DNA from: Octopus bimaculoides
Lineage: Eukaryota
NCBI RefSeq assembly: GCF_001194135.2
Contig: NC_068983.1
Span: forward strand, 136,659,606 to 136,723,605
Length of the DNA: 64,000 nucleotides
Reading direction: 5' to 3'
The notes beneath the pieces are model-generated. The model saw nothing but the letters and a program-made list of their open reading frames with translations. It did no database searches and was not told the DNA's origin. Numbering within the stretch: position 1 is the stretch's first letter; each line of letters starts with the position of its first letter. A program made the translations under genes and the position numbers. Of this stretch, positions 9,359-64,000 are shown piece after piece.

Positions 9359-9364
9359 CCCCAG
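9359..9364 (+). CDS. Cav1: Candidate 6-nt microexon in the IIIS3-S4 linker (AA|CCCCAG|C = N-P-S)
   Basis: Preceded by an AG-free pyrimidine tract (atcacttctttttcatcttcctttctttgtccaaccAG) and followed by CAG|GTGAGA. Frame-preserving in phase 2. 101+6 = 107 nt, the recalled length of the orthologous vertebrate exon. No transcript evidence. Confidence 0.75.
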
Positions 9365-10509
9365 GTGAGAATTACCAGCATCAATTGGTGCTTAATTTTA
9401 ACTTTAAGCATGTCAACTATGACCTTAGAATACAGTGCCATCGGTATGCTAGTGCTTGACTTACTTAGAGCAGCCCTTCCAAACATATCAATCAATCTGT
9501 CTATCAACTATTTTCAATAGGTAAATATCTAAGGACTATCTCTTTTCAGAGATTTTTCAGCAAAACTAGTCAGAAGTGTTAGAACATCTGAGTATGTCAC
9601 AGCTTAGAGTGAATATTGAGTAATGTAACAAATTGGTTATAAGTCACTGAATTTTATATATGAATTTTTAAAAATATATCTAATATTGATTAAGAAACTA
9701 TAATTTTCTATATACTCAATTTGTGGTTATCTTTTTTACAGCTTTATATATTTTTTTATGTTTAAGTTAAAATGCAGACATCAACAATCAAAAAAGTGCA
9801 ATGAGGGAAGATGGGAAAGTGCTTATTTTCTTCATATGTGAGTTAGGATGACAATTAAGGCTATCTCAGTATTGTTCTTATCAGTAATTTAGATTAAAAT
9901 TATAATAAATTATTTTCATAGTACTTAGTTATATATATTAAGCCAGTTTAGATTAAAATTTCACGTGACAATCACAATTTTAAAACTTTGACATGGAGAC
10001 TGCAATAATTTTTCTTTCTATATTTGTCATGCTCCTATCTGACTTCAATTGCTTTAGTGGTTTGCTGCTACTTCACTACATATTTTCAAAATGATTATTA
10101 ACTCTGCAATCACAGAAAGCAAAACAAAACAGAAAATTCAATAAACTTAATGCAATTTATACTCATATATACTTATAATATATGTATATATGTGTGTGTC
10201 TATATATATATATATGTGTGTGTGTGTATGTATTCATATATATATATGAATAATGTACATGTGTATATAAGCAAATATATATTTGCATAAACATATGTAG
10301 GTATATATGAATAGTGTATTTGTGTATGTATGAAAATACATGTATATACAACTATATTGTCTGTATGGAGACTACATATGTGTATGTATGAGAATATGTA
10401 TATATGAATAGCATAAATGTGTGTATGTGTGTCCTTATAAAGGTGGGTTTGTAAACCTTGTTTGACTTGATCTTCTGAATATATAGACAAATAGATAGTT
10501 TCTTTTATC

Positions 10510-19339: not shown

Positions 19340-19780
19340 GTGTGTTTATTGAAGGAGAAGTTGGACATAAGAGGAATTGTATGCAGTATAGAGGAGGCTG
19401 TGCTGGTTTGGTCATGTGATGTGGATGGATGAGTGCAGTTGCATAAAGAAGTGCCTATCAGAGATGACAGAGGACCAAGATATGTGGTGCATTGCTGTAC
19501 TTGAGAAGACCCACCTATCACAACATAATTGAGATCCTACAATCAAAGTTCCACATAAAAAGCACTGGTGCTGGTGCCACTTAAAAAGCACCTGTGATGG
19601 AGCTACATAAAAAGCACCCAAAACACTGTGTAGAGTGGTTGGCATTAGGAAGGGCATCCAGTTATAAAAACCAAGCCAAAACAGACTATGGAACCTGGTG
19701 CAGCTCCTTACCAGTCCCTGTCAAGCCACTCAACCCATGCAAATATGGAAAACAGACATTAAATGACAATGATGATGATA
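19340..19780 (+). mobile_element. RTE-family 3' coding remnant + tail
   Basis: LKEKLDIRGI..C..W..HV-like remnant, then the recurrent tail ending in atgatgatg. Confidence 0.65.
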
Positions 19781-38055: not shown

Positions 38056-38108
38056 GGAACATTCCACATGTGTTCAGATTCCTCAAAAAGAACCATGGAA
38101 GAATGCCA
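38056..38108 (+). CDS. Cav1: Cav1 exon: IIIS5-P extracellular turret (GTFHMCSDSSKRTMEEC + CA)
   Basis: ttttAG acceptor and GTAAGT donor. 53 nt, ends in phase 2. C-x-D-x-S-K...EC motif. Confidence 0.95.
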
Positions 38109-42790: not shown

Positions 42791-42992
42791 CCTTTTGTAC
42801 ATTTCTATTGACTCCCATCAAGAAGGTATGGGACCGGTTTATGACAATCGTCCTGTAGTAGCTATTTTCTATTTTGTTTACATCATCGTCATTGCATTCT
42901 TTATGGTTAACATCTTCGTTGGTTTTGTGATTGTCACATTCCAGAACGAGGGAGAGCAAGAATACAAAAATTGCGAACTCGACAAAAATCAG
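42791..42992 (+). CDS. Cav1: Cav1 exon: IIIS6 and start of III-IV linker ([67 protein letters not shown])
   Basis: cttttcAG acceptor and GTATGT donor. 202 nt. [12 protein letters not shown] and [13 protein letters not shown] are diagnostic of Cav1. Confidence 0.98.
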
Positions 42993-45824: not shown

Positions 45825-45935
45825 TATGATGGTGAGAATAAAGGTTACTCAGATGTGCTGGATTATCTTAATATGATTTTCACTGGACTCTTTACTGTGG
45901 AATTTATGCTCAAGTTGGCTGCTTTTAGATTTAAG
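45825..45935 (+). CDS. Cav1: Cav1 exon: IVS2 ([37 protein letters not shown])
   Basis: ttttctaattgcAG acceptor and GTAAGC donor. 111 nt (37 codons). Confidence 0.97.
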
Positions 45936-48301: not shown

Positions 48302-48385
48302 AACTATTTTGGTGATGCCTGGAACGTTTTTGATTTCATTATTGTTTTAGGAAGTTTCATTGATATCATTTATACAGAAGTGAAT
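48302..48385 (+). CDS. Cav1: Cav1 exon: IVS3 ([28 protein letters not shown])
   Basis: ctttttctccAG acceptor and GTGAGT donor. 84 nt, equivalent to vertebrate exon 31/32. The IVS4 exon was not found before 64000. Confidence 0.98.
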
Positions 48386-51300
48386 GTGAGTATCTGTTCT
48401 ATCTTATCTATCACTCTATATCTATATATCTATCTATTTGTCTGTCATATATATATAGTTGTCTTTCTATTTAGAGAACTAACAGTCACAAGTTTCATTT
48501 TTGTTAACAGAATCTGAAGCATATTCCTTTAGAATTACAATCTACTTTAGAATACAAATATACAGTGATTTTTATATATCTTTCAATTCTAAGGCAATAG
48601 CATCATTGTTGCATGAAGTTTCTTTGTCAACTGTATTAAATTAATTTAATTTTATACTTAATTTGTTATTGTTGTTACTGCTTTTTTTTTTTTACATTTT
48701 AGTTTTAAATTTCTGGGGGTTTTTCTTTTGTTTATTTTTAATCCCCAAATATTTCATAACAAGACTATTCCTGTACCTGATCTCAAATGAATGCTGCTCT
48801 ACTTATGATCCAAGGATTGAATATATACAGTGTTTTTGAGAAAACTGAAATTAAATACAAAACAAAATGTTGTTGGTTCTGTTTAAATTTTGCTGAATCT
48901 GTTCTATCTTCTTCAAAGACTTACGGGAAAATTTTGCTTGCATTCTTAGCATGGCTGCTCTTCTCATTGATCTTAAGCATTAATATTTTGTGTTCTTCAC
49001 TCAGTTTCAGCGACATTAATTAATGAGAAATTGTTCTGTATTTTATCTGCTCCTGCTGCAACATAGGAATTAAATATTGGATCAGCATTTAACTTATTTC
49101 AATATTACAAGGTTTTTTTTTGTTTTTCTCTCTCTTCTTTTGTTTAAAAATTGACACTTTCAGTTGTTCAAACAAACAAAAAAGGATAAAAATTATACAA
49201 AAGAAACCAACAGTATTTGATATTTTAAATCATATTTTCTGATTCACTGTTTGCAGCTGTAAAAGGAGATTTTTCACACAGTGATATTTTCTTCAACATC
49301 ACTTTTTGTTTTATAGTGAAGGGGAATCTTTTTGTTATGTTGTTTGTTTACTGTTGTTACTTTGTGTTTTATATGTTGTTGGTATTTATATATTATCTTG
49401 TGAGTATTTTTATCAGTTTAGTTTGAATAAATCAGTTCAATTTAGTTCAGTTCATAACACACACATGCAGTATATATGTATACGCATGTATATTCACATA
49501 TATGCATAGAGTTTTAGTTTTTTTTTTCAAATTGTACTTCTCATTGCTCTCCCTTTCCCTTCATAAATGCTGCTAACTGTTTCTTTTCTTTTTCTTCACA
49601 TTTTTTTTATATATGCATAGCTTTTTTCTCCTTTTCTCATATATACATATATGGTGACTGTCCACCAATGTCCAAGGAAGATCATCACTGACAGACATAA
49701 GCTATTTATATATAAGTCAGTGACTGTGTGCTTCCAATTCATCATGTCTGCACACATGGTCATCTTCCCATTACCATAAGAAAATTAAAATAAAAACAGC
49801 CTTTTAAAAAAAGAGTACTGAAGTCAGCAATGCCCATGCAGAATTTTAATAAGGTTTGCACAACACCTCATAAAATTTTTTTACGCTATTGGTATGATCC
49901 AGAGACAAGCCTGAACAAGATATTTGGTAATAATAACAGTCACAGATCAGGAATGTAAGAGTCATAATCTTTAGCTAATGCTGAAGACTCCCACCAACAC
50001 TGCCAATGCAGTTTCCTGCATGAATTTTCTACTTGGAAATATGCTTCAACAGAAGCTAAGGAGTGCAATGAAAACCAATCCAGAATTTCTGAGTCCTTGT
50101 GCTCTTGCTAAATAGTTGTTGACTCTATGCTGGATCTATCCGCTCTTTTGAAATGTATTGTTTCTATCTTACTAGGTTTCCAGTAATTCTCTTTACCATG
50201 ATGAAGCCAGTTTAGCTGCCAGTGAACCAACCAGGCTATTGGTTGTACTGGATTACATGTTACTAATAACATTACTTGATTACATAAAGCACATGTATAA
50301 GATCATAATTAAGAAGAATAATATAATTTATATATACATATGATACATATATAATATTTATATGTATATAATACTTATATAATATATGTGTGTGTGTGTA
50401 TTATTATATCACATACACCTACATGCACATACATATATGATTTTATTTTTTATTTATTCATCTAATTATTTACCTACTTAGGTATTTATATATTAGTTAT
50501 GTTCATTTTTTTTATTCTTTTTTAATTTTCAATATAAATTTGGAAAATAAGTGTTGACTTTGCTATTTTCCATGTGATTGTTTCTTTATATGACAATATG
50601 AACTATTTCTGCTATCCATTTATTTGCTATTGTTATTGTTGTTTTAGATTTTCAATTTTATTTCTGGAGAACTGAACTGTTGTCTTAGAGACTTGTGTAT
50701 GCTGCCCTGGTGCCATATCATTTGCTATTGAGCTGTCTGAATTTTTTTATTATATTTTGTTTCGTCCAGCAGGTTTTAATATCAAGAGAATAACACTAAA
50801 CCTCCCATTCTCTAAACAAAACATCACTTGTTATTAGCTTATTTACTAAACTTTTTTTTATCACCCTGCTAAATTCAACATCATCCAGTTAATATAATGC
50901 ATTTTCCAATTCTACATTATCTTGACAAAGTAAATCTCACTTCATACTGTCTACTTTACAGTAACAAATGCAACATTACTTCCATTAGATTATGTTAAAT
51001 AATATATTACCTTACTAATTATCACTTCAATAAAGTGAGTATTACCCTATAACTGGATTTATCAAATTAAGATGTATGGTGTATTTAATAATTATTATCA
51101 GTTGTTTATTGTTAGCTCCAAATTAAGCTGTCAGTACCTTGAACCACATATGGTAAACTCAGCTATCAGTACTGATAAAAATTCTAACAAATCATGTTTT
51201 TATTTTATATTATGCCACCTTTATCCATGTCATACTGTTAAAATAATATACAAGTTATTAAGCTGTGCCATTTTTATAAAATCTGTTTTCGTCCTAATAA

Positions 51301-51944
51301 GCAATGTGTCATGCTATGTTAGACCATTAAAACAATACATATCTTGGTAAACACTATCAAAATCAAATAAAACAAAATCATTACTGTTCTAAACAATATG
51401 TTACTTTTGTTATAGCAATAACCAACATATAGTAATTTCTAAATAGTATGACAACTTTATGACCAATGTGTCACTGGTACATAGATATATGACATTGTTA
51501 AACAGCATCATGCAAACATCATTTAGCACTGTAATATCGCAACAGATATCTTCTCAATCTCTTTTTGCTATCAGAAAAATGTGGATAGTTCCTATAGCCA
51601 TAAGGTTCTCTCATGTCAGAGATCATTTGAATAATGACTTTCTTTCAAAACTTTATACTTATAAAAAAGTTTTTATCAATCAGTAGGTTACTGCATGCTA
51701 GCGATTAAAACTTTACATACTTTTCGTGTATGTGTTCATGGATATGTTTATTTTCATGCCCCATTTGGGGTTTTTTTTTGGTTTTTTTATAAACTCATAT
51801 GGATTGGTTGTTTGAGCAAATTCGAATATTTGCATGATCTTTGCCTTCTTACAGTTCATAACAATGACCTTTCTCTGCAGTGCATCATGGAACCAGGTTA
51901 TGCTTTGAATAACCTTATGAAGGAAAACTTTCTCTCTCTCTCTT

Positions 51945-51977
<33 letters not shown>

Positions 51978-53627
51978 TCCATACACACTCAGCAATTTCT
52001 TTAAATTAAAATTCTGTTAGAGAATGTAAATAAATAATTGCAACTGAAGCATTTATTAAATATGCAGGGGCTACACTAGACAAACCATTACAATTAAAGT
52101 ATGATAGGTGAGTAAACTGTTGGGTAGTAATGATAATAATAATAATCATAATATTCCTTAGCAATTTTATAATACCTAATACCTAATTTTATAGACCTTG
52201 TGTAGTATAAAGGTAAAAATTAGACTACCTTTTTGGTTCTATGAAATAAGAGATATATCAACTATTTCATTCTCATGCCTCCAGGCACCCGTGTTTGTCT
52301 ATTGGAGGAAAAGTAGCAAAACATTTGTGGAAAATTTCCAGGTACTCTATTAGCTTTTTAGTTAGTGGAGTATTTCCCTCCTACCCTATTTATTTAAAGT
52401 TGCAATCTAAAATTAAGTACTTAAGTTTTGTAACTTATGACATGATTATAGTTAATGCCAGTGCCATAAATTTTAAATTAATCTTCTATATCACTAAACT
52501 AAATTGTTGAAGCTGAATGTCAACAAGATATCTATTAGCTGAAAGTTTTACAATTTTTAACTTTCACTGGCTCATTCTTCACTTTACTGAAAATAGGTTC
52601 CATGGTGAAAGTGCAGCTTACCGCTGTAATAGCTGCAAGGCAAATGCACAGTTGACTTGCAATATCAAGCTCAAAATCCTACCATAGGTACAGTATAGAG
52701 AAACACTCTTCTGATATCAACAGGAATAATCACCCATTGAAAGATACATTTGGTTAGGAAAAAGAACTAATACTTTCTTGAGACTGATTCTTTTAACTGA
52801 TTTCATTAACAGCAAGATTTCAGAATTCTGCAACACCATCACTTTTTATTTACATAACTAATACTTTAAATGGAATATTGCTAACTAAATTATAGCCAGA
52901 TTCCTTTCCTTGTGCTAGCAGTTGTTACAGTAGGCAAAAATATAAATTTTTCCACTGCTATTAGAAATGATACTTTCACAGGCTTTACACCTATATCTTA
53001 CTTTGAGTAAAAGCAATTCTTCTTTATCCAAACAAATTAGGCACTGATAATATAACTTAAAACATTTTAAGAGGTAATTAGATAAGTAGATTTTATCAAA
53101 TTATGTAGAATGTAATTAAAAGCAAACAGAATCAATATTCAATTATTTTGACAATCAATTTGAACTTTAGCATTAAAGAAATAAATTTAGAAAATTGCAC
53201 TCAGAGTATTCAGTGAAATTATAAACAGAGGATATCCTTAAAAATATCTATACTAAAGTCAGCTAAATAAGTAAACATATTAGTGCACGGTTTTTCTGTT
53301 TACTGCTACCATGACATGTTTAGTTTCTTAATAACCTAAAACCAAACCAAACAACACAGTTCTTTATGAGATGAAACTCACCAGGATTATATTTTACACA
53401 CTATATTTTATAAAAATACTATCACTGTATTTTATGCTACCAAGTTAATCTTCTTTTTCTGCACAATTTTCTGTTAATTTTTGTGCCTTTCCTATTTACA
53501 TTGCATGTTTTTTCTTTCTTTTTAATTTTTTCTTTTCTTTTTATTTTTTCTCAGTTTTTCTCTAACTGAAGTATGTAATATCTAATGAATTCTTTCTTGT
53601 TCATTTACTTATATTCTTTGCTCTCAG

Positions 53628-53639
53628 CGAAACTCAGAG
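53628..53639 (+). CDS. Cav1: Candidate 12-nt microexon in the IVS3-S4 linker (CGAAACTCAGAG = R-N-S-E)
   Basis: Pyrimidine tract with TGC just upstream of the AG (atattctttgctctcAG), branch-like TCTAAT at 53581, donor GAG|GTTTGT. Phase 0/0, no stop. Preceded by about 150 nt of T-rich tract. No transcript evidence. Confidence 0.55.
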
Positions 53640-53743
53640 GTTTGTTTTCTGTTTCAAATAAATCCACTGGGTTATTGCTTCCATTGATTTAATGTGTATT
53701 TTACAATTTTGTTGTGCTTTTATATACATGCATATATACATAT

Positions 53744-53797
<54 letters not shown>

Positions 53798-55369
53798 TGC
53801 TAGGCATTATATGCTGAATTTACTGCTCTTGATGTTGTTGCTGCTGCTGTTATCAATATTATTGCTTTTAGAAATAGTTATGGCTATGTCCACACGCCTC
53901 TGCTATTTGGCTGCTACTGTTGTGTTTTTGTTAGTGCTAATGATGCTGATAATGATAATACTGTTGCCTTCTCTGATAGCAAGATGTAAACAATGTAAAA
54001 AATGCCTAAAAGATAAGTTTAGTTTTAGTATGTCACTTGAATTTTTCAAAATTTGTAAAACTTACAGGGTGGTGTCAAAAGCTGTTGGTTTTTTTTTTAA
54101 CTTGATAATTTAAAAATCAAACACATCAAGTTTTCAATCAAAAGTAAATATAACTTAACACATAATTTTGTTTCTTTTTCTTCTTTGCATATTCATTAAA
54201 TCAAAAGAAATTGGCTTTTCGAATATGTTCAACACTTCATTTCTCCTAAGATCTTCAAATTAAATTTATTCATTAAAACAGCTTTCTATATTTTCAAAAA
54301 GGTATTTTTTTTCTCTTGAAATTATTTCAAAGATGATCAAGTAGCATTTTGATCACATTTTCATGGTGGAAACTAATTGCCAAACTAAACTGCATAGTTT
54401 AATAATACTGGTTTGAAATGTGAGCTATTCAAGCAGCATTATCTAAAGAGTAGATACTGAAAAGGAAAAGCATGTACATTGAACAAAAGAAATAAGCTAC
54501 TTTTCAAAAGAAGCATATCAATTCATTCATATTTGCACATTGCACAATTGCACATGTGTATCATCATCATCATCGTTTAACGTCCGCTTTCCATGCTAGC
54601 ATGGGTTGGACGATTTGACTGAGGACNNNNNNNNNNACGCCAACCAGCTGTAGAAACTCTGCCAAATCAGACTGGAGCCTGGTGTTGCCATCCGGTTTCA
54701 CCATGCATTTAGGAATATCAACAATAGCATTAGAAAAGCTTCTAACTTTGCATTTTGACATTGCAGTGATAAGTGCAAGGCCATATTTAATCAGTTTGAC
54801 ATCATGGACTTCATCCATCTATATTGTGATATTGCAGCCTGTTATCCATATATGTATGAAAACCAAACCCCATCCAATTATGATATGGTGGTAGGAACCA
54901 TGCTTCCAGTAATTGTTTTAGGTACCTATGTAGTCATAAGCAAGTACAGACTCTCTCACAGCCCTTCCACCCACCTTAACATCCAAAATGTGACAGCTGA
55001 AAAGATAGAAAAGATTTTTAACTGCATGATAGTGCACTCAACTGAGAGCAATTTCAGCTGAGTAGATTAACAATAGCTTGAAATGAAGAATCTTCCACAA
55101 GAACATATCAAGCAATAACTGCTCAGCCACACATGTGCATTCACATATATAAATGTTCAGATATGTATACACACGTATCTGTCATCATCATCATTTAATG
55201 TCCATTTTCCATGTTGTGTATGTGTATATATCAGGTCATCCCATATGTTCTGTCTGAATTTTGAATAAAGAAAACAAGTGATCAAATGTTATATTTAATT
55301 GAAATTTAATCATCAGTGTACTTTCCCTGATTATCTATAACTTCCTTCCATCTATTTACAAGCTTTTTA

Positions 55370-55488
55370 ATAATAAACTGTCATCTAAATTACGCAAAAA
55401 TGAAAATAACACTGACATCTCATTTTAACAGATATATTTACCAAAATTCCGTAAATATATCTTGAAATACTAAAGAGTAAATTTATTC
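55370..55488 (-). mobile_element. End of another maT copy running into the N-gap
   Basis: cagatatatttac.aaaatt.cgtaaa.atat.ttgaaatact.aagagtaaatttattc matches 14401-14460. Confidence 0.75.
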
Positions 55489-56430
55489 NNNNNNNNNNNN
55501 NNNNNNNNNNNNNNNNNNNNNNNNNNNNNNNNNNNNNNNNNNNNNNNNNNNNNNNNNNNNNNNNNNNNNNNNNNNNNNNNNNNNNNNNNNNNNNNNNNNN
55601 NNNNNNNNNNNNNNNNNNNNNNNNNNNNNNNNNNNNNNNNNNNNNNNNNNNNNNNNNNNNNNNNNNNNNNNNNNNNNNNNNNNNNNNNNNNNNNNNNNNN
55701 NNNNNNNNNNNNNNNNNNNNNNNNNNNNNNNNNNNNNNNNNNNNNNNNNNNNNNNNNNNNNNNNNNNNNNNNNNNNNNNNNNNNNNNNNNNNNNNNNNNN
55801 NNNNNNNNNNNNNNNNNNNNNNNNNNNNNNNNNNNNNNNNNNNNNNNNNNNNNNNNNNNNNNNNNNNNNNNNNNNNNNNNNNNNNNNNNNNNNNNNNNNN
55901 NNNNNNNNNNNNNNNNNNNNNNNNNNNNNNNNNNNNNNNNNNNNNNNNNNNNNNNNNNNNNNNNNNNNNNNNNNNNNNNNNNNNNNNNNNNNNNNNNNNN
56001 NNNNNNNNNNNNNNNNNNNNNNNNNNNNNNNNNNNNNNNNNNNNNNNNNNNNNNNNNNNNNNNNNNNNNNNNNNNNNNNNNNNNNNNNNNNNNNNNNNNN
56101 NNNNNNNNNNNNNNNNNNNNNNNNNNNNNNNNNNNNNNNNNNNNNNNNNNNNNNNNNNNNNNNNNNNNNNNNNNNNNNNNNNNNNNNNNNNNNNNNNNNN
56201 NNNNNNNNNNNNNNNNNNNNNNNNNNNNNNNNNNNNNNNNNNNNNNNNNNNNNNNNNNNNNNNNNNNNNNNNNNNNNNNNNNNNNNNNNNNNNNNNNNNN
56301 NNNNNNNNNNNNNNNNNNNNNNNNNNNNNNNNNNNNNNNNNNNNNNNNNNNNNNNNNNNNNNNNNNNNNNNNNNNNNNNNNNNNNNNNNNNNNNNNNNNN
56401 NNNNNNNNNNNNNNNNNNNNNNNNNNNNNC

Positions 56431-56800
56431 AGCTGTCTGGCTTCCGTGCCAGTGGCACGTAAATAGCACCATTTGAGCATCGCCTTACTGACACATGAAA
56501 AGACATTTGAGCGAGGTCGTTGCCAGTTCCACTGGACTGGCTCCTGTGCAGGTGGCACGTAAAATATACACCATTTTGAACATGGCCATTGCCAGTACCG
56601 CCTGATTGGCCTTCGTGCCAGTGGCATGTAAAAGCACCCACTACACTCTCGGAGTGGTTAGCGTTAGGAAGGCATCAAGCTGTAGAAACTCTGCCAAATC
56701 AGATTGGAGCTTGGTGTAGCCATCTGGTTCGCCAGTCCTCAGTCAAATCGTCCAACCCATGCTAGCATGGAAAGCGGACGTTAAATGATGATGATGATGA
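56431..56800 (+). mobile_element. 66-bp module array + young RTE-type tail
   Basis: Same family as 2128-2454; CpGs retained. Confidence 0.8.
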
Positions 56801-56833
56801 TCACACACACACAAATATATATGCCTATATATA

Positions 56834-57980
56834 TGAGGATAAGTCAAAATTTATACACACTCTTGTTTCTGTAATTTGTTAAAACAAAAACAAGGGTTGA
56901 ACAATTACATCATTTTTCAACATAGTCTCCTTGCTTTTTGATGCACTTCTTCCAGCAGTCTATAGGCTTGCTTATTCCATCAGAGAAGCTTTTTGGCTGG
57001 TCACACAGCCATTTATGCAGTGCTTCCTGTTCTTTTTTATCCATAGCAAATCAACAACCTCATAATGAATGTTTTGAGCAGTCTAAAGAAGTAATAGTCA
57101 GAATGGGCAAGATCTTGAGTGTATGCAGATGTTCCAGCAACTCAAAACACAATTTTTCAATGGTGTGGGTGGCCTTATGTGATTATGGCTTGTCGTGCAA
57201 CAATAAAACTTGATTTGATAATAGATCTCAACATTTGATGCAAATTGCTGGTCTCAGTTTGTTGGCCAGCATTTCACTGTAGCCTACATTGGTAATGTTC
57301 CAGTTTAAGTCCTTTTGCATCCCCAAAAATGGTTGCATCACTTTTTCTGTGACAAGTTGAGTCTTGAATTTCTTTTCCACTGATGATTTCTGGTGTGTCC
57401 ACTCCATCCTCTGCCCTTTGGGTTCTGGCTCAAAGTGATGAACCCAGGTCTCATCTCGTGTGACTATTCTCTCCAAAAAAGCTTCACCTTCATCATTGTA
57501 GTGATTAAGTAAGCATTGACAGATCTTTACACAATTGCACTTCTGAGCTTCAGTAAGCTCTTTGGCACCCATCTCACACTGACTTTTCAGAAGCAAAGCT
57601 TGTTGTTGATAATTTATGATGCAGAACCATTCTAATTTGCAAAGGACATGCTTTCTCATCGACTATCACTTGTTGGTTTGCCAGAACCATTTCTCAAGCT
57701 TGTTGAATCTTCACATCAGTAATGGAAGTTGATGGGCATTTTGTTCTTTCATGCTTCATGCATGTCTGGCCACTTTTTAAACTTTTTGATCCACTTATAC
57801 ACACTTCTTCACAGTAGAGAACTCTCCTCATATTGTAGTGAAAACCTGCAATGAATTTCAGCCCCTGACATACCTTCAGACCAGGAAAATCAGATCACTG
57901 GTGTATGTTCTTCCTTGGTGTACCCTGCCAGTGGAGTGGCCATGTTTACTTTGTAACACAAGAAAGAAAACTGGAGCAGT
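56834..57980 (-). mobile_element. Mariner (DD34D-type) transposon, degenerate
   Basis: MATPLAGYTKEE...SGAEIH...VYKWIKKFK, FLERIVTRDETWVHHFEPE and DLAHSDY remnants. One end is TA-TGAGGATAAGTCAAAA. Confidence 0.88.
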
Positions 57981-57989
57981 CAAAGTTAA

Positions 57990-58240
57990 ACCTTGGTTAT
58001 GTAATCTCAAGAGTACCACCTGGTATGGTCATGTGATGTGTATGGATGAAGACAGCTGCATAAAAAATTGCCAATTACTAAATATGAAGAAAACTTGTGG
58101 AAGATGGAGGCTCAGAAGGTGTAGTACAAAGTACTGAAGACCAATCTCGAGTTGTTGAGCTTCATAGAGATGACAAAAAACCAAGATGAGTGGCATTCAC
58201 CATGCTTGATAAGACCCATCCATCTCAGCCAAAATTATAT
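57990..58240 (+). mobile_element. RTE-family 3' fragment
   Basis: WYGHVMCMDEDSCIKNCQLL..TCGR. Confidence 0.7.
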
Positions 58241-59289
58241 TCTAAAAGAATATCATTAATATCTATGCATACTTCTCACACCCACTCTGTACCTGTCAAG
58301 CCCTCCTCATGACTCATTTTTGTAACACCCATCCCTCCTTCATCCTTCTAACTATGGCAGAGCAGAATTTCACATATTCCATTACCCCTTTTGTGCTACC
58401 AGTTTTCTCCTCTCCTTGAACCAATTCATGTGTGTGTGTGTGTTGTGTATGAGACTGAAGACAGGTCTAGACAGTTGGTAAAGGCATCCAGCGTGAAACA
58501 GTACATTTTAATAATGAAAGCTTTGTTCAAGAAATATATGCACAATCACTACCTCAGTCAGGAACTATGAGAAATGGATTGTCACAACAGTAGCCAAGTG
58601 AGAAAACTGCAAATTACATTAGGAAATTATTAGAAAAATGCAAGTCCTATTGCAATGCAGCATAAGGTGAAGACTGTGTTGAATGGAAAAGAGACTAATT
58701 CCCAAGAATTCACTAACGCCTGAACTTTATATGAATGCTAAATCCGAAACTTTTATGTGTTGCTTGCACACAAGAAATACCATTTTCTAGTACTGGTCTA
58801 AACTCACTTGAGATGGTCACCATTAGAAATCTCTCTATTATCATCATTAACCTCTCTCTCTTTTCATTATCTTCCATTCCTTTATTTCCTCCTTTCTTTC
58901 TTTTCCTTCTTTCATTCAGCAATTTTTATAGTTTTCGTTTTACTTTCTTGTTTCCTTGTATTCTTTCTTCCCTTCTTTCTTTAATTACATAATTAGGCTA
59001 TTTGATTAAATTTTATACCAGGAGGCATAACTCTTCGGTCTTAAATATTGAATTATTGCCCTTGCACTAGATTCTTTTTTTTTATAGTTTTATATGTACT
59101 TTATTGAAATGCATAAAGATAACAAAAAGTACACCTCACTTCCTCAATTCATTTTGCAAGTGCCATTCTATATTCAAATTGGTACGTCCATTTGATATTG
59201 CTGAAAATCTATTAGTTATGCAATCTTCTTACAATTGCTAAACATATACAACTATGTATTCATATATGTGCGTGTGTGTGTGTGTGTAT

Positions 59290-59940
59290 CGAAGGTGAGA
59301 TTACTCACTGCATACACCTCCACCCAACAAAGAAGCTCATCGCCTTTGTCAAATTTGATGAGAAAGTGTTTGTTGCCATGTCTAGCACCTCAGGCCTACT
59401 TGCATTAGCAAACGTCTGGGAGCTAAAAGTGTACATTGGGAAACTGCTGAAGTTGCCAGAAACCACTGCTTCAACATCACTAAAGTTGGATGTGATGTTG
59501 GTCTCTGAAGCATCCGAGCAGGTGGTTCTCTTGAAACTCTCCATTCCCTGAGGACCACATTGAAGAAGCTAACAAGTGCAAGAGGAGGAAATATACTGAG
59601 CTAGTGGAATTATGCCAGAGCAATGGCAGGTAAATGTGTGATCCCATTGAAGTGGGATGCAAAAGTTTGTAGGCTAGTCCTTACAAAGATAGTTTGTAAT
59701 GTTTGGCATTACAGAGACCAGAAGGCTATCAGGTTGTCTGTAGAGGCAGCAGAAGCTGCTTCAAGGTGGCTTTCGATTTGTTGTGAGCCCTGGAAGGGAC
59801 AGTGTTAACTGGAGACAAGCTGGAACTTGATCAACCTTGGCTGAGACATCTAGGTGAAGATGTCTCATGTTGAAAGACCCAAAACACCTAATGACCCCAG
59901 GAAACATTACTGATGATGTGTCCAGGTGTATCACAGGATG
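59290..59940 (+). mobile_element. HERO-like (REL endonuclease) non-LTR retrotransposon, 5'-truncated
   Basis: GLLALANVWELKVYIGKLLKLPETTASTSLKLDVMLVSEASEQVVLLKLSIP*..IEEAN..KRRKYTELV..PIEVGC and EAAEAASRWL, followed by a 3' UTR (gttgaaagaccc..aacacc.aatgacccc..ctgatgatgtgtcc) of the recalled HERO type. Confidence 0.75.
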
Positions 59941-60116
59941 ATATATGGAAAGAGTATATTTATATATATATGTGTGTGTGTGTGTGTTTGTGTTTATGTA
60001 TTTATTTTGCAAGTGCAAGATTCTTGATGTGAAATTGTGTATTGAAACAGATATTATATTTAGTGATGGTGATTTTGCAAATAAGCACATCACTATTTAG
60101 TTGATTTTTACTTTAG

Positions 60117-60148
<32 letters not shown>

Positions 60149-60577
60149 GTTTATTTGTCCAGAGTTCTTTTATCACTCATTTTGTAACAACTTCAATGAC
60201 TATCTTTTTTTTGTTTCCTCTTCTCTCTGATCTTGTCCTATCTAATCTATCTTGTCTTTCTCCTGTTTATTCCATCTTGTATCTCTATCTGCTCATGTGT
60301 TTGCATCTATTATTTTGTAGGTGTAGGTTTATCTTGAGTGTATGTAAATGGATTTATATATTACACTGTTTGTATCCACATCTCTTTTTTCATTCCTGTT
60401 CTGTCTTCAGTTATGTGGAGTGGGTGAGTGTTATCACTCCATTCACATCTACTGTTGAGGCTTGGACTATTTCCCATTATGTGTGTGGCCTCCATACTTT
60501 TTCTGAGTATTATGTTTGTTCCATGTCAAGATCTTAACATCTATGTTATCTATGGAGCCCCCATATTCTAGTTTAGC

Positions 60578-60800
60578 ATGTATTCATATATGTGTGTGTG
60601 TGTGTGTATCGAAGGTGAGATTACTCACTGCATACACCTCCACCCAACAAAGAAGCTCATCGCCTTTGTCAAATTTGATGAGAACGTGTTTGTTGCCATG
60701 TCTAGCACCTCAGGCCTACTTGCATTAGCAAAAGTCTGGGAGCTAAAAGTGTACATTGGGAAACTGCTGAAGTTGCCAGAAACCACTGCTTCAACATCAC
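60578..60800 (+). repeat. Near-identical local duplicate of 59254-59480 (flank microsatellite + HERO 5' junction)
   Basis: 60601-60800 vs 59281-59480: 198/200 identical by eye. Confidence 0.92.
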
Positions 60801-61640
60801 AGCACTGCCCCTCTGTATGCCTTGTACTATAGACTGCATTCCTAGTTTTGCAGTTTGTTTGTGGGATTAACTCCACACACTACACAGTTCCTATCCATAC
60901 AGGGGATTCTTTCAAATGGGTATGTTCTACAGATCAGGGATTTTATGGGAGCTTCTAGCCCTTCAACTACTTTAATCTGTAGATTCAGTTTGCCTAGGGT
61001 TTTTTTTTTTTAAATGATACACTAGTTTGCCTCCAAGAGCAGCATCAACAAACATGATGCTTGGTATTTTTGGCTGTGATGCCATAAGTTGGCCTTACCT
61101 ATCATCCTCTTAGTTCTTTCTATGATTTACTCCTGTATAGTGGGCAGATCCCCTTTGTGTCATTCTCTTTGATAGTCTTGAACTTTGTTCCTTGTAGACC
61201 CTGATATTATTTTTTCTGTACCCAGAGAACTGCATGAAGTGGATGAAGTGTTGTATGTGTCTCTCTAATTCCATTGGGTCACAACACCATGAAACTCCAT
61301 GTCACTCTCACTGATCATTTCCATGCATTTCCCCACAGCAAAATTAACATCAATGAAATACTGCCTATTACGCAACATGTCAGGTCTCAGGAACATCTTG
61401 ATTATGAGGTGTATGATCATAAAGAAGAAGTAGGAGATTCTGTAGTTGCTAGTAATGTTAGCTCTGCTGACTGGTCCGGTTGGGGGTCCTGCCACTGGAT
61501 CAGTGGTTATTTTATGATCCTTACGGAGTCCATACAGCACTGGAATGTCATTATTCACAGCTTGGAAATTGTTAGCCATGCATTTCTTTTGGTCCTAGGA
61601 TGTTTGACTATATCATCATGTGCTTGTTTCTTTTGTGTTA
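60801..61640 (-). mobile_element. Penelope-like element RT fragment
   Basis: PVLYGLRKDHK...GPPTGPV (decayed PxLYGLPKxHK...RP), SWCCDPMELERHI..F..SGY and C..C..NCKTRNAVY at the GIY-YIG start. Confidence 0.7.
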
Positions 61641-61849
61641 GTGATGTGGAGTAGAACAGACATGATACTCAGACTGATTACAGAGATCATACACGTAGTA
61701 AAATTTGACTGATTACAGAGGTCATTCGCATAATAGAAAATAGACCGAGCCTCAACAGAAAACATGAATGGAATAATAACACCCACTTATAAGACACAGG
61801 TTCAAACAGTGTAATATATAAACCCACAAACACACACATATACAAACAC

Positions 61850-62030
61850 ATACACAGATATGATGGGTTTCTTTCTGTTTCCATCTACAAAATCCACACG
61901 CAAGGTTTTGTTCAGCTTAGGGCTATAGTAGAAAACACTTGTCCAAGGTGCCATACAATGGGAATAAACCTGAAACCACATGGTTGTAAAACAAATTTTT
62001 TGCCACAATATCCGACACCCACTCTTATAT
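61850..62030 (-). mobile_element. tRNA-derived SINE
   Basis: Reverse of the 27160-27280 family (gggctatagtagaaaacacttgtccaaggtgcc). Confidence 0.75.
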
Positions 62031-62429
62031 AGATGACATAACCCTTCATTCTTCTCTAATCGTGCATCATCTACATGCAACAAGACACAACTTACTAAAT
62101 CTACTTTGTCTCTCTGTCTATGTCTCTTTTCTGTCACTACAGTAATGGCCTTTACTCCTCAGAACTTGCTGGTCTTGTATTTCTACCACTCAGGCACACA
62201 TTGTATGTCCACTTATCAGTACCTTTGGTGGGACCAACCACTCTTTTCCTTGCTTCTTGTTGCATGAATCACTGTGCTTTCCTGCAACAGTTTAAATGAA
62301 ATAATAATGGCATCAGTCTTGAAGGCCCTACATGGTCAAAGGTTCTGTCCCTTCCTCCAGACTTTGCAAGGGGAAAGGTTAAAGTTTGTGAGATTGTATG
62401 CCTAATCCAGAGAGAGTGGTGTTCTCCAG

Positions 62430-62890
62430 TTTGATAATAGAAATTTGTCAAGTTCTTTCATTTAGTGAAAATCTTGGATCTAGAATTCAGTATGTCAGTG
62501 GAATTCTTAGATTTATAAAGGATATAAATTCTTTCTACTCTACAAAGCCTGCACTTCCGTGACCCATTAACATTATGGTATGAATCACTCTAAGATTCAC
62601 CATTGATGGCTTTTACAGGATGCTTGCTGAATTAGTTGTTTTCTTCTTGTTTATGTGCTGGTGGTTGGCATATCTTTTTATTTTTGTTTTGTTAAAGTTA
62701 CTTTCACATATGCCAGTATGCTTTTCCTTTTGAGTTTTTATTATTTTGTAAAACTGAAGTGACCTCAGCTTCATATACCACTGAGCTAACCATGCATGCT
62801 TGGTTGAGTGGGCAAGTGTCTGGGTCTCTAAAGTTACATTTTGGAAAAAACACCTGGTGTGCCTTATGTATGATAATGTTTTTCATGCTT
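62430..62890 (-). mobile_element. Penelope-like GIY-YIG/C-terminal fragment
   Basis: CNFRDPDTCPLNQACMVSSVVYEAEVTS...KAY and KCRLCRVERIYIL...LNSRSKIF. Confidence 0.75.
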
Positions 62891-63119
62891 GAGAAGACTT
62901 ATCCATGTATCGAGAATTGAGGCTCTGTCAAGCCTTCCTCAACAACTCATCTTTTAACACCTACTCTTCCATCAGTCTTCTATATCCCTCACTTACCCCT
63001 CTGTGTCCAACTCCTTCCCTATCTCTAATCATCTGTCACACTTTTCACTCAGTGCACCTACACATCCATCTTTTCTGCTTTTTTATCTTGTCTCATATTC
63101 ACCTTGTACATGGACCTCA

Positions 63120-63158
<39 letters not shown>

Positions 63159-63454
63159 GAGCAACTCATGTATTCACTTCAGCAACACATCTGTTCTCCT
63201 TGACCCTCTGTCATAATTTCTTATCCCTCCATTCAATAACCAACTCAGTTGAGGGGTCTAATCTTGCAGGTACTTGGCAACCTCACCAATGCTGATGCCA
63301 CATAAAAGACACCCAATACACTCTTTTAAATAGTTGTCATTAAGAAGGGCATTCAGCTGTAGAAACCATGGCAAAGCAAACTTAGTAACTGATGCAACCC
63401 TTTGGTTTGTCTGTTCTTGTTGAACCATCCAACTCATGCTACACGGGAAAAGGG

Positions 63455-64000
63455 TCAGCAAATGATGGCCCATGTTTCACTGCTGTGTAGCATGGCAGTT
63501 TGCACACATGCATCATACAGTCTACCTTTCATCCTGAGTGAGAGGCCCTTAGTTGCCAGCAGAGGTAGGAGCTCCCTGAACTTTGCCCAGGCTATTCTTA
63601 TTCTGGCCACTATACTCTCAGAGCAACCACCCCTTCTACAGACTTGATCGCCTAAGTAGCAGAAGCTATCAACTACTTCTAGTTTTTCCCCCTGGCATGT
63701 GATGGAATCTATTTTCTGTACATCTTCAGTGTTTATCGCCCCTGTGCATCTGCCACATACAAAAACTATCTTCCTGGTTAACCTTCCTTTGATATTGCTG
63801 CACCTTTTGTGTCCATAGCTTACATCGGCTACATCGTATGGAGCCATCTACCTGGAGGAGTTTGTGACTTGTTAGCCTTCGTACTTACTAAGACTTTGGT
63901 TTTTACTTGGTTGACCCTAAGGTCCTTCAATTCTAGACCTTGCTTCCACATCCTAAACTTCGTCTCTTGTTCTGGCAATGACTCAGCTATTAGAGCAAGG
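63455..64000 (-). mobile_element. RTE LINE RT C-terminal fragment
   Basis: GEKLEVVDSFCYLGD..GGCSESIVARIRIAWAKFRELLPLL..LSLRMKGRLYDACVQTAMLHSSETW. Confidence 0.88.

What the first reader, a model, noticed from the sequence alone, without database searches (positions are those of the whole stretch)
53440..53650. 12-nt microexon candidate RNSE in the IVS3-S4 linker
Seen: TCTAAT, then tctttcttgttcatttacttatattctttGCtctcAG, CGAAACTCAGAG, and GTTTGT; in frame, giving IYTEVN-RNSE. The TGC immediately before the acceptor is the canonical eMIC/SRRM4 enhancer position. Established: this linker is the hot spot of Cav1 alternative splicing (exon 33 of Cav1.2) and shifts voltage dependence. GTTTGT is a weaker donor.
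Basis: partly seen in the sequence, partly recalled or inferred. Interest (0 to 1): 0.75.

Follow-up and report, generated by a model that had tools for sequence, protein, structure and literature searches.

The report
Real 12-base microexon in octopus calcium channel
The 12-base stretch is very probably a genuine optional mini-exon that adds four amino acids (RNSE) to a voltage-sensor loop of an octopus L-type calcium channel, but public gene models of a sister octopus species already contain it and such optional inserts at this loop are common, so it is a correct but fairly ordinary finding.

Summary
CGAAACTCAGAG lies at 53628-53639 (+), after a pyrimidine tract ending ...TTTGCTCTCAG and before GTTTGT. 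It sits 5.2 kb downstream of the IVS3 exon of a Cav1 gene, which ends ...IYTEVN|GTGAGT in phase 0.

Splice signals alone do not single it out. Two other in-frame AG...GT candidates in the same 15.6 kb score as well or better. Its donor is weaker than all 11 real donors in the window.

The decisive evidence is external. Octopus sinensis RefSeq isoforms X1-X3 read TEVN-RNSE-RIDNDDPSQPTLSSGA-(LSLDNS)-PGSPIISINFFRLFR. X4 differs from X3 only by these four residues, and X5 skips every insert. A chance RNSE-coding 12-mer with AG/GT flanks is expected about 2e-4 times in this stretch.

So it is one of three optional cassettes (12, 48 and 18 nt) in the IVS3-S4 linker. Optional inserts at this junction are annotated across molluscs and insects, and occur in assembled cuttlefish-like transcripts.

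A modest effect on channel gating is inferred from vertebrate Cav1.1 and Cav1.2. Control by eMIC/SRRM4 fits the sequence motifs but is untested.

I examined no RNA reads and no second cephalopod genome.

The parts
48302..48385 (+). Upstream constitutive exon encoding IVS3 ([28 protein letters not shown]). It ends in phase 0 and is followed by the donor GTGAGT.
   Evidence: tblastn of Cav1 proteins against the window; boundaries read; unique ACAGAAGTGAAT.
53582..53586 (+). CTAAT, a candidate branch point (CUAAY consensus). The branch A lies 43 nt upstream of the exon start.
   Evidence: Sequence; motif position; CUAAY is described as the branch-point consensus of eMIC exons in PMC8797185. The function is inferred.
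53590..53625 (+). Pyrimidine-rich tract (77% C/T over -25..-4) containing TGC (53619-53621, position -9) and CTCTC directly before the acceptor.
   Evidence: The tract is within the range of the gene's real acceptors (64-91% C/T).
53626..53627 (+). Acceptor AG (cAG). The nearest upstream AG is 54 nt away.
53628..53639 (+). 12-nt cassette microexon CGA AAC TCA GAG = RNSE (called cassette A here), inserted between TEVN and the rest of the IVS3-S4 linker.
   Evidence: In frame with the phase-0 end of the IVS3 exon. It encodes the same peptide found at the same position in O. sinensis isoforms X1-X3 and absent from X4 and X5. Chance expectation is 1.9e-4. It is not part of a dispersed repeat.
53640..53655 (+). 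Weak donor GTTTGT followed by a U-rich run (GTTTGTTTTCTGTTTC).
   Evidence: Approximate PWM score of 4.9 bits against 7.2-11.8 bits for the real donors scored; T at +3 and +4, whereas all 11 real donors have a purine at +3. A helper role for the U-rich run (TIA-type) is an inference from general knowledge.

Best explanation
Window 53628-53639 is a genuine, alternatively included 12-nt cassette microexon of an octopod Cav1 (L-type) calcium-channel alpha-1 gene.

When included, it is spliced to the phase-0 end of the IVS3 exon. It inserts Arg-Asn-Ser-Glu at the start of the extracellular S3-S4 linker of voltage-sensor domain IV.

It is the first of three optional cassettes in this linker: A = RNSE (12 nt), B = RIDNDDPSQPTLSSGA (48 nt) and C = LSLDNS (18 nt). 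B and C lie outside the window. The annotated combinations add 0, 16, 20 or 26 residues between TEVN and PGSPIISIN.

Shown: the sequence, the reading frame, the splice dinucleotides, and identity with a peptide that is optional in the sister species' annotated isoforms.

Inferred, about 0.5: lengthening or stiffening the linker next to the conserved IVS3 aspartate (SFID) and the outer IVS4 arginines modestly shifts activation to more depolarised voltages and/or slows it. This is by analogy with Cav1.1 exon 29 and Cav1.2 exon 33.

Inferred, about 0.4: inclusion is neuron-enriched and helped by the eMIC domain of the Srrm234 orthologue acting on the UGC/UCUC element in front of the acceptor. That help would compensate for the weak donor.
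For: 1. Gene and position. Eleven Cav1 exons from IIIS1 to IVS3 map on the + strand. The candidate lies 5.2 kb into the intron after IVS3.

2. Orthologue isoforms. O. sinensis XP_036357314, XP_036357315 and XP_036357316 carry TEVN-RNSE-RIDN. XP_036357317 is identical to XP_036357316 apart from a 4-residue deletion here. XP_029634462 skips all inserts.

3. The window comes from a different octopod: 4 substitutions in 416 aa against both O. sinensis and O. vulgaris. The coding 12-mer is therefore conserved across species.

4. Chance expectation of an AG/GT-flanked RNSE 12-mer in this stretch is 1.9e-4, and it is the only RNSE in any + frame of the window.

5. In the window the 12-mer is followed by GTTTGT and non-coding sequence, not by RIDNDD. 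It must therefore be a free-standing exon.

6. The same junction carries optional inserts elsewhere. Oyster isoforms have REKGDLK present or absent, and many insects and a nemertean also carry inserts. Assembled decapodiform RNA-seq transcripts differ only by an 18-nt QRLDAS insert.

7. The cis motifs fit the published eMIC code: UGC near the 3' splice site, UCUC, a CUAAY branch point, and a weak 5' splice site in flies.

8. The functional precedent is published.
Against: - No RNA-seq read, EST or cDNA from any octopus was examined. The RefSeq isoforms are computational models whose supporting evidence I could not see.
- The donor GTTTGT is weaker than every real donor in the window.
- RNSE is absent from the single available models of O. 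vulgaris and Argonauta hians, and from the decapodiform transcripts. It may be restricted to a few Octopus species or be a minor isoform.
- In the annotated isoforms RNSE never occurs without cassette B.
- DNA-level conservation of the flanks could not be tested. The orthologous genes span 459 kb and 195 kb and no DNA was returned.
- The downstream exons are not in the window.
- The AlphaFold model of VSD IV with the insert is of low confidence (mean pLDDT 58.7, under 50 beyond the insert). It says nothing reliable about structure.
Confidence: 0.82

Rival explanations
1. The window 12-mer is a chance pseudo-exon that is never spliced. The RNSE in the O. sinensis models comes from something else, for example an upstream alternative acceptor of cassette B.
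For: Splice signals alone give 3 equally good candidates in 15.6 kb. The donor is weak. RNSE always co-occurs with cassette B in annotated isoforms, which is the pattern a tandem acceptor would give.
Against: A chance RNSE 12-mer with exact AG/GT flanks, in the right intron and right phase, is expected 1.9e-4 times. In the window it is followed by GTTTGT and not by RIDNDD, and cassette B is not adjacent.
Confidence: 0.05
2. The exon is really spliced, but only as a rare by-product of removing a very long intron. It has no selected function, and its presence in RefSeq reflects a few reads.
For: The donor is weak. The exon is absent from the O. vulgaris, Argonauta and decapodiform models. The intron is at least 15.6 kb and the orthologous gene spans 459 kb.
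Against: The peptide is identical in two octopod species. Three of five O. sinensis isoforms carry it. The site is a recurrent, functionally proven target of regulated splicing in other Cav channels. A recursive-splicing role is excluded, because joining AAT to CGAAAC regenerates no donor.
Confidence: 0.13
3. The exon is real, but it is controlled by regulators other than the eMIC/SRRM4-type factor. Candidates are Rbfox (as for Cav1.2 exon 33), PTB, or TIA-type proteins binding the U-rich run after the donor. It may distinguish muscle from nerve rather than being a neural microexon.
For: Cav1.2 exon 33 is reported as Rbfox-regulated (PMC5774182 and PMC10995029, listed). A TGCATG lies 121 nt upstream, at 53502-53507. 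A U-rich run follows the donor. The gene is named a 'muscle calcium channel' in RefSeq. The UGC and the AG-free zone are not statistically unusual here.
Against: There is no GCATG on the + strand within 830 nt downstream, which is where Rbfox enhancers normally lie. One upstream GCATG is near the chance rate. The combination of UGC, UCUC and CUAAY matches the published eMIC architecture.
Confidence: 0.35

Closest known systems
RNSE-containing RefSeq isoforms of the Octopus sinensis 'muscle calcium channel subunit alpha-1-like' gene (XP_036357314, XP_036357315, XP_036357316; skipping forms XP_036357317 and XP_029634462)
   Same: Same gene (99% identity over 416 aa), same position after IYTEVN, identical four residues, and optional in the isoform set.
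   Different: A different species. Those are computational protein models with no genomic sequence available to me. The window supplies the actual 12-nt exon and its splice sites.
Cav1.2 (CACNA1C) exon 33 and Cav1.1 (CACNA1S) exon 29, optional cassettes in the IVS3-S4 linker
   Same: Same linker and the same phase-0 boundary after ...EVN or its equivalent. Both are optional. Inclusion shifts activation to more depolarised voltages: excluding exon 33 gives -6.3 mV, and excluding exon 29 gives about -30 mV with larger current.
   Different: They are 33 nt (PAEHTQCSPSM) and 57 nt, with no sequence similarity to RNSE, so they probably arose independently. Any gating effect of RNSE is untested and likely smaller.
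Cav2.2 e31a (ET) and Cav2.1 (NP) 6-nt inserts in IVS3-S4 (from my own knowledge; primary papers cited in PMC5330888)
   Same: True microexons in the same linker of a high-voltage-activated channel. They are neuron-type specific and tune activation kinetics or toxin sensitivity.
   Different: They belong to the Cav2 subfamily, are 6 nt long, and are found in vertebrates.
Optional inserts between EVN and PGSxIISIN in other protostome Cav1 models and transcripts
   Same: Same junction. Oyster REKGDLK (21 nt) is present or absent in Ostrea edulis isoforms. Decapodiform cephalopod transcripts differ only by QRLDAS (18 nt). Cockroach has TPTRFK and mosquito ISKGMKG.
   Different: The sequences are unrelated to RNSE. 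Whether any share ancestry is unknown. QRLDAS resembles octopus cassette C (LSLDNS), not cassette A.
eMIC (Srrm234/SRRM4)-dependent neural microexons
   Same: Length of 27 nt or less, UGC close to the acceptor, a UCUC-type pyrimidine tract, a CUAAY branch point, and a weak donor as in the fly programme.
   Different: Neural specificity and dependence on the factor are untested. The motifs are short and common in this AT-rich intron.

Membership tests
Alternatively spliced cassette in the IVS3-S4 linker of a high-voltage-activated Ca channel alpha-1 subunit | The host gene is a Cav1/Cav2 alpha-1 subunit. | tested here: met
   Window exons translate to IIIS1-IVS3 of Cav1. They are 99% identical to O. 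sinensis Cav1 and 78% to Lymnaea Cav1.
Alternatively spliced cassette in the IVS3-S4 linker of a high-voltage-activated Ca channel alpha-1 subunit | The exon lies in the intron between the IVS3-coding and IVS4-coding exons. | tested here: met
   It is 5.2 kb downstream of the IVS3 exon, with no IVS4 exon before it. In the orthologous protein RNSE sits between TEVN and PGSPIISINFFRLFR. The IVS4 exon itself is outside the window.
Alternatively spliced cassette in the IVS3-S4 linker of a high-voltage-activated Ca channel alpha-1 subunit | The length is a multiple of 3, there is no stop codon, the phase is compatible, and the borders are AG/GT. | tested here: met
   12 nt, CGA AAC TCA GAG. The upstream exon ends in phase 0. 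The borders are cAG| and |GTTTGT.
Alternatively spliced cassette in the IVS3-S4 linker of a high-voltage-activated Ca channel alpha-1 subunit | Both inclusion and skipping products exist. | tested here: inconclusive
   This holds at the level of annotated O. sinensis isoforms: X3 against X4 differ only by the 4 residues. No reads or cDNAs were seen, and nothing is available for the window's own species.
Alternatively spliced cassette in the IVS3-S4 linker of a high-voltage-activated Ca channel alpha-1 subunit | Inclusion changes voltage dependence or kinetics of activation. | not testable with these tools
   Only analogy is available. The structure model is of low confidence.
Microexon (27 nt or less) | The exon is 3-27 nt long and free-standing, not an alternative splice-site extension. 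| tested here: met
   It is 12 nt. It is not contiguous with the IVS3 exon, which is followed by GTGAGTATC. It is not contiguous with cassette B, which is absent from the window.
eMIC/SRRM4-dependent neural microexon | A UGC motif close upstream of the 3' splice site, with a UCUC-rich pyrimidine tract. | tested here: met
   TGC is at -9 and TCTC at -6. The motif is weak evidence on its own: 2 of the 3 scan candidates also have TGC within 20 nt.
eMIC/SRRM4-dependent neural microexon | A long AG exclusion zone and a strong CUAAY branch point. | tested here: inconclusive
   CTAAT lies at -43. The AG-free zone is 54 nt, but the constitutive exons of this gene range from 21 to 113 nt.
eMIC/SRRM4-dependent neural microexon | Neural-specific inclusion that depends on the eMIC domain. 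| not testable with these tools
   No expression data are available.
Rbfox-regulated exon (as reported for Cav1.2 exon 33) | (U)GCAUG within a few hundred nt downstream of the exon. | tested here: not met
   No + strand GCATG lies between 53640 and 54469. One TGCATG lies 121 nt upstream.

The most novel reading that the evidence does not exclude
Octopus neurons tune their L-type channel with a combinatorial set of tiny exons. Three independently chosen cassettes (12, 48 and 18 nt) in the S3-S4 loop of voltage sensor IV would act together with a 6-nt 'PS' microexon in the S3-S4 loop of voltage sensor III (window 9359-9364).

The shortest exons would be under the ancient eMIC microexon programme. 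This would give a graded series of activation thresholds, evolved independently of the vertebrate exon 29/32/33 system.
Probability: 0.2. Interest if true: 0.55.

Novelty: already known. Interest (0 to 1): 0.3.

Why it matters
The S3-S4 loop of voltage sensor IV is the place where vertebrate L-type channels set their activation threshold by alternative splicing.

Octopods insert up to three small cassettes at the same junction, including this 12-nt microexon, and the cassettes are unrelated in sequence to the vertebrate exons. That adds a clear case of recurrent evolution of the same regulatory solution in an independently evolved complex nervous system.

It also gives a concrete target for testing whether the bilaterian microexon (eMIC) programme operates in cephalopods.

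The gain in knowledge is modest. The isoforms are already in RefSeq for O. sinensis, and optional inserts at this junction are widespread in annotated protostome Cav1 genes.

Tried and rejected
1. Short protein queries (172 and 88 aa) returned no cephalopod. Every listed hit was no longer than about 1.75 times the query. A four-fold repeat of the 416-aa window protein reached the full-length proteins.

2. Fetching orthologous genomic DNA failed.
- O. sinensis isoform X3 is not on record.
- X1 spans 459 kb and the Argonauta gene 195 kb, so no DNA was returned.
- Two window ORFs have no exact match in the collection.

3. L003 is an octopod-like contig carrying the IVS4 exon. It has no cassette A, B or C within 5.8 kb upstream and does not overlap the window.

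4. L004 and L005 turned out to be bivalve loci (linker TGSRIISIN). They hold no comparable microexon candidates.

5. The 50%-identity representative search found no octopus fragment spanning the linker.

6. Cassette B in the window: 58214-58249 reads DKTHPSQPKLYS, 8 of 12 residues matching Argonauta's cassette B. It lacks AG/GT borders and belongs to a dispersed repeat also present at 19445-19545. I rejected it as the exon.

7. No second, mutually exclusive IVS3 exon (as in Cav1.2 exons 31/32 or Hyalella) was found.

8. A recursive-splicing exon is rejected, because joining AAT to CGAAAC regenerates no GT.

9. The microexon is not inside a repeat.

10. Literature searches for cephalopod Cav1 linker splicing or octopus microexons in this gene found nothing specific.

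11. The AlphaFold model of VSD IV with the insert has mean pLDDT 58.7. The S3 helix nominally runs through RNSE, but confidence is too low to use.

Full report
**What is in the sequence.**

- TCTAAT is at 53581-53586.
- A pyrimidine-rich tract runs 53590-53625 and ends ...TTTGCTCTC.
- The acceptor AG is at 53626-53627.
- CGAAACTCAGAG is at 53628-53639.
- GTTTGT is at 53640-53645.

The window is AT-rich (about 29-38% G+C) with several N gaps. ACAGAAGTGAAT occurs once, at 48374-48385.

**The host gene.**

I ran tblastn with Cav1 fragments from the protein searches. Together they map eleven exons on the + strand, from IIIS1 (558-692) to IVS3 (48302-48385).

The IVS3 exon ends ...IIYTEVN|GTGAGT in phase 0. 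This is the same boundary as in vertebrate Cav1 genes. No IVS4 exon (FFRLFRVMRL...) exists anywhere in the window. The intron after IVS3 is therefore at least 15.6 kb, unless the exon hides in the 941-nt N gap at 55489-56429. The candidate lies 5.2 kb into this intron and reads RNSE in frame.

**Do splice signals single it out?**

They do not.

The acceptor is as good as the gene's real acceptors. It has 77% pyrimidines over -25..-4 and a cAG, against 64-91% for the real ones.

The real donors that were scored give 7.2-11.8 bits. All eleven real donors have a purine at +3.

I scanned 48386-64000 for in-frame, stop-free exons of 3-30 nt whose tract and donor are at least as good as the candidate's. 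The scan finds three: the candidate, 58403 and 60411. The reverse strand gives none. The same scan, with a slightly looser tract threshold, finds none in 15 kb of two bivalve introns.

On sequence alone the candidate was a reasonable guess, but not a demonstrated exon. The region is not a dispersed repeat.

**The decisive evidence.**

The first two protein searches returned only short fragments and no cephalopod. Every listed hit was no longer than about 1.75 times the query. Querying with four tandem copies of the 416-aa protein encoded by the window reached full-length proteins. The best matches are an Octopus sinensis RefSeq cluster and a decapodiform cluster built from Logan RNA-seq assemblies plus Acanthosepion (Sepia) pharaonis.

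The IVS3-S4 linker of the five O. sinensis isoforms reads as follows.

| Isoform | Linker between TEVN and the IVS4 segment |
|---|---|
| X1, X2 | TEVN-RNSE-RIDNDDPSQPTLSSGA-LSLDNS-PGSPIISINFFRLFR |
| X3 | TEVN-RNSE-RIDNDDPSQPTLSSGA-PGSP... |
| X4 | TEVN-RIDNDDPSQPTLSSGA-PGSP... |
| X5 | TEVN-PGSP... |

Pairwise comparison confirms that each pair differs by a single element.
- X3 and X4 differ by nothing except these four residues.
- X1 and X3 differ only by LSLDNS.
- X4 and X5 differ only by the 16-residue block.

The window is not O. sinensis. It differs from both O. sinensis and O. vulgaris at four positions in 416 aa. The RNSE codons are therefore shared by two octopod species.

A chance RNSE-coding 12-mer with AG and GT flanks is expected 1.9e-4 times in this stretch. 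RNSE occurs nowhere else in any + frame of the window.

In the window the 12-mer is followed by GTTTGTTTTC and not by codons for RIDNDD. It is therefore a free-standing 12-nt exon, not an extension of the next cassette.

I conclude, with about 0.8 confidence, that 53628-53639 is the orthologue of an annotated optional microexon.

**Limits of that evidence.**

- RefSeq X-isoforms are computational. A 12-nt exon is very unlikely to enter such a model without transcript alignments, but I could not see the supporting reads.
- RNSE is absent from the single O. vulgaris model (all cassettes skipped).
- It is absent from the Argonauta hians model, which has cassette B only, as RIDNDDPSQPKLSSGA.
- It is absent from the decapodiform transcripts.
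- In the annotated set RNSE never occurs without cassette B.
- I could not obtain any second cephalopod genome sequence for this intron. The O. sinensis gene spans 459 kb and the Argonauta gene 195 kb, both too long for the tool. Other look-ups gave an octopod-like IVS4 contig without the cassettes, or bivalve loci.

**Context: this junction is a general hot spot.**

Among the 120 best full-length hits, the basic linker is EVN-PGSxIISIN. Many species have isoforms with extra residues exactly between EVN and PGS.
- Ostrea edulis has REKGDLK present or absent.
- A nemertean has PDNKDYDKDW.
- Abalone has YQRECNVTGDVCRYV.
- Cockroach has TPTRFK.
- Mosquitoes have ISKGMKG.
- Wasps and flies have longer inserts.

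In a decapodiform cephalopod, assembled transcripts from independent RNA-seq runs (SRR25158133 and SRR23936173) carry an 18-nt insert, QRLDAS. Otherwise identical transcripts lack it. That is direct transcript-level evidence for microexon use at this junction in cephalopods. QRLDAS resembles octopus cassette C (LSLDNS) and not RNSE.

**How it most likely works.**

The four residues are added at the extracellular end of IVS3. This is just after the conserved aspartate of ...GSFID..., which is the 'D4' countercharge in PMC5330888.

The vertebrate precedents are as follows.
- In Cav1.1, including the 19-residue exon 29 displaces IVS3 from IVS4 and weakens the D4-R1/R2 interactions. Activation shifts by about +30 mV and current falls.
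- In Cav1.2, excluding the 11-residue exon 33 shifts V1/2 by 6.3 mV to less depolarised potentials.
- Linker flexibility correlates with V1/2 and activation time constant across Cav1.1-1.4.

By analogy, RNSE probably gives a small depolarising shift and/or slower activation. It would act as the finest step in a graded series of linker insert lengths (0, 16, 20 or 26 added residues). This is inference, and I rate it at about 0.5. The AlphaFold model of VSD IV with the insert is too uncertain to add anything (mean pLDDT 58.7).

**Regulation.**

The published eMIC architecture has four features: UGC close to the 3' splice site, UCUC-rich tracts, long AG-free zones and a CUAAY branch point. Weak donors are an added feature in flies (PMC8797185).

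The candidate has TGC at -9, TCTC at -6, CTAAT at -43, a 54-nt AG-free zone and a weak donor. This fits. However, each element is short, the AG-free zone is ordinary for this gene (21-113 nt), and one of the two other scan candidates also has a nearby TGC.

An Rbfox-type enhancer is not apparent. There is no GCATG within 830 nt downstream, and one TGCATG lies 121 nt upstream. I put eMIC dependence at about 0.4.

**Comparison with what is known, and novelty.**

The feature works like Cav1.2 exon 33, Cav1.1 exon 29 and the 6-nt Cav2 inserts. It meets every structural criterion of that class that could be tested here. It shares no sequence with them, so it is probably an independent origin at a recurrently used site. 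That fits the 'recurrent evolution of neural exons in the same genes' reported in a 2026 bilaterian-wide preprint that includes O. bimaculoides.

The RNSE isoforms are already public in RefSeq for the congener, so I rate the finding as already known at the annotation level. My searches found no paper describing or testing it. Interest is modest, at 0.3.

Noticed in passing
window 9359-9364 (+): CCCCAG flanked by ...cttcctttctttgtccaaccAG| and |GTGAGA. It is the only site in the 28-kb IIIS3-IIIS4 intron that can encode the extra 'PS' present in all five O. sinensis isoforms ([16 protein letters not shown]). The O. vulgaris and decapodiform proteins lack that 'PS'. This is probably a 6-nt microexon in the S3-S4 loop of voltage sensor III. 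A GCATG lies 44 nt downstream (9408-9412). The bare pattern is expected about 0.4 times by chance, so the case rests on the strong flanks and the protein match.
   Followed up: partly
window 58214-58249 (+), also 19445-19545: This stretch translates to DKTHPSQPKLYS, matching 8 of 12 residues of cassette B (Argonauta RIDNDDPSQPKLSSGA). It has no AG/GT borders and lies in a repeat that is about 75% identical to another copy in the window. It may be coincidence, or a hint that cassette B derives from a mobile element. This is unresolved.
   Followed up: partly
L001 4277-4294 (Logan SRR25158133 transcript); also L002: An 18-nt insert, CAAAGACTTGATGCCTCG (QRLDAS), lies between TEVN and PGSPIISIN in assembled decapodiform cephalopod Cav1 transcripts. 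Otherwise identical transcripts (P0371) lack it. It resembles octopus cassette C (LSLDNS).
   Followed up: yes
window exons at 38056-38108, 42791-42992, 45825-45935: The window protein differs from O. sinensis, O. vulgaris and Argonauta at four positions (M/S, Q/L, K/E, D/N). The decapodiform transcript shares their residue at the last three. The window therefore comes from a third octopod lineage with its own substitutions. The species was not identified. O. bimaculoides is only a guess from the gapped assembly.
   Followed up: partly
window 57228-57659 (-) and 63455-63847 (-): The ORFs look like mobile-element remnants inside the intron. One is mariner/Tc1-like (..RDETWVHHFEPE..) and one is reverse-transcriptase-like (..FCYLGD..). 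I judged this by eye from the ORF list only.
   Followed up: no
window 53720-53790 (+): Long (TA)n and (TG)n microsatellites start about 85 nt downstream of the microexon. N gaps lie at 54627-54636 and 55489-56429, and could hide short exons.
   Followed up: no
O. sinensis proteins P0365 vs P0364 (outside the window): Isoforms X1 and X2 differ by a single Arg (PPAG[R]DDEV). This is the signature of a 3-nt tandem (NAGNAG-type) splice site in the C-terminal region. The O. vulgaris model also lacks a 15-residue block (GHRFMFFKKRWKRPR).
   Followed up: no
P0001 (Hyalella azteca fragment): Two tandem IVS3-like segments lie in one ORF ([28 protein letters not shown] followed by [28 protein letters not shown]). 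This suggests mutually exclusive IVS3 exons in an amphipod, as in vertebrate Cav1.2 exons 31/32. No such duplicate exists in the window.
   Followed up: partly
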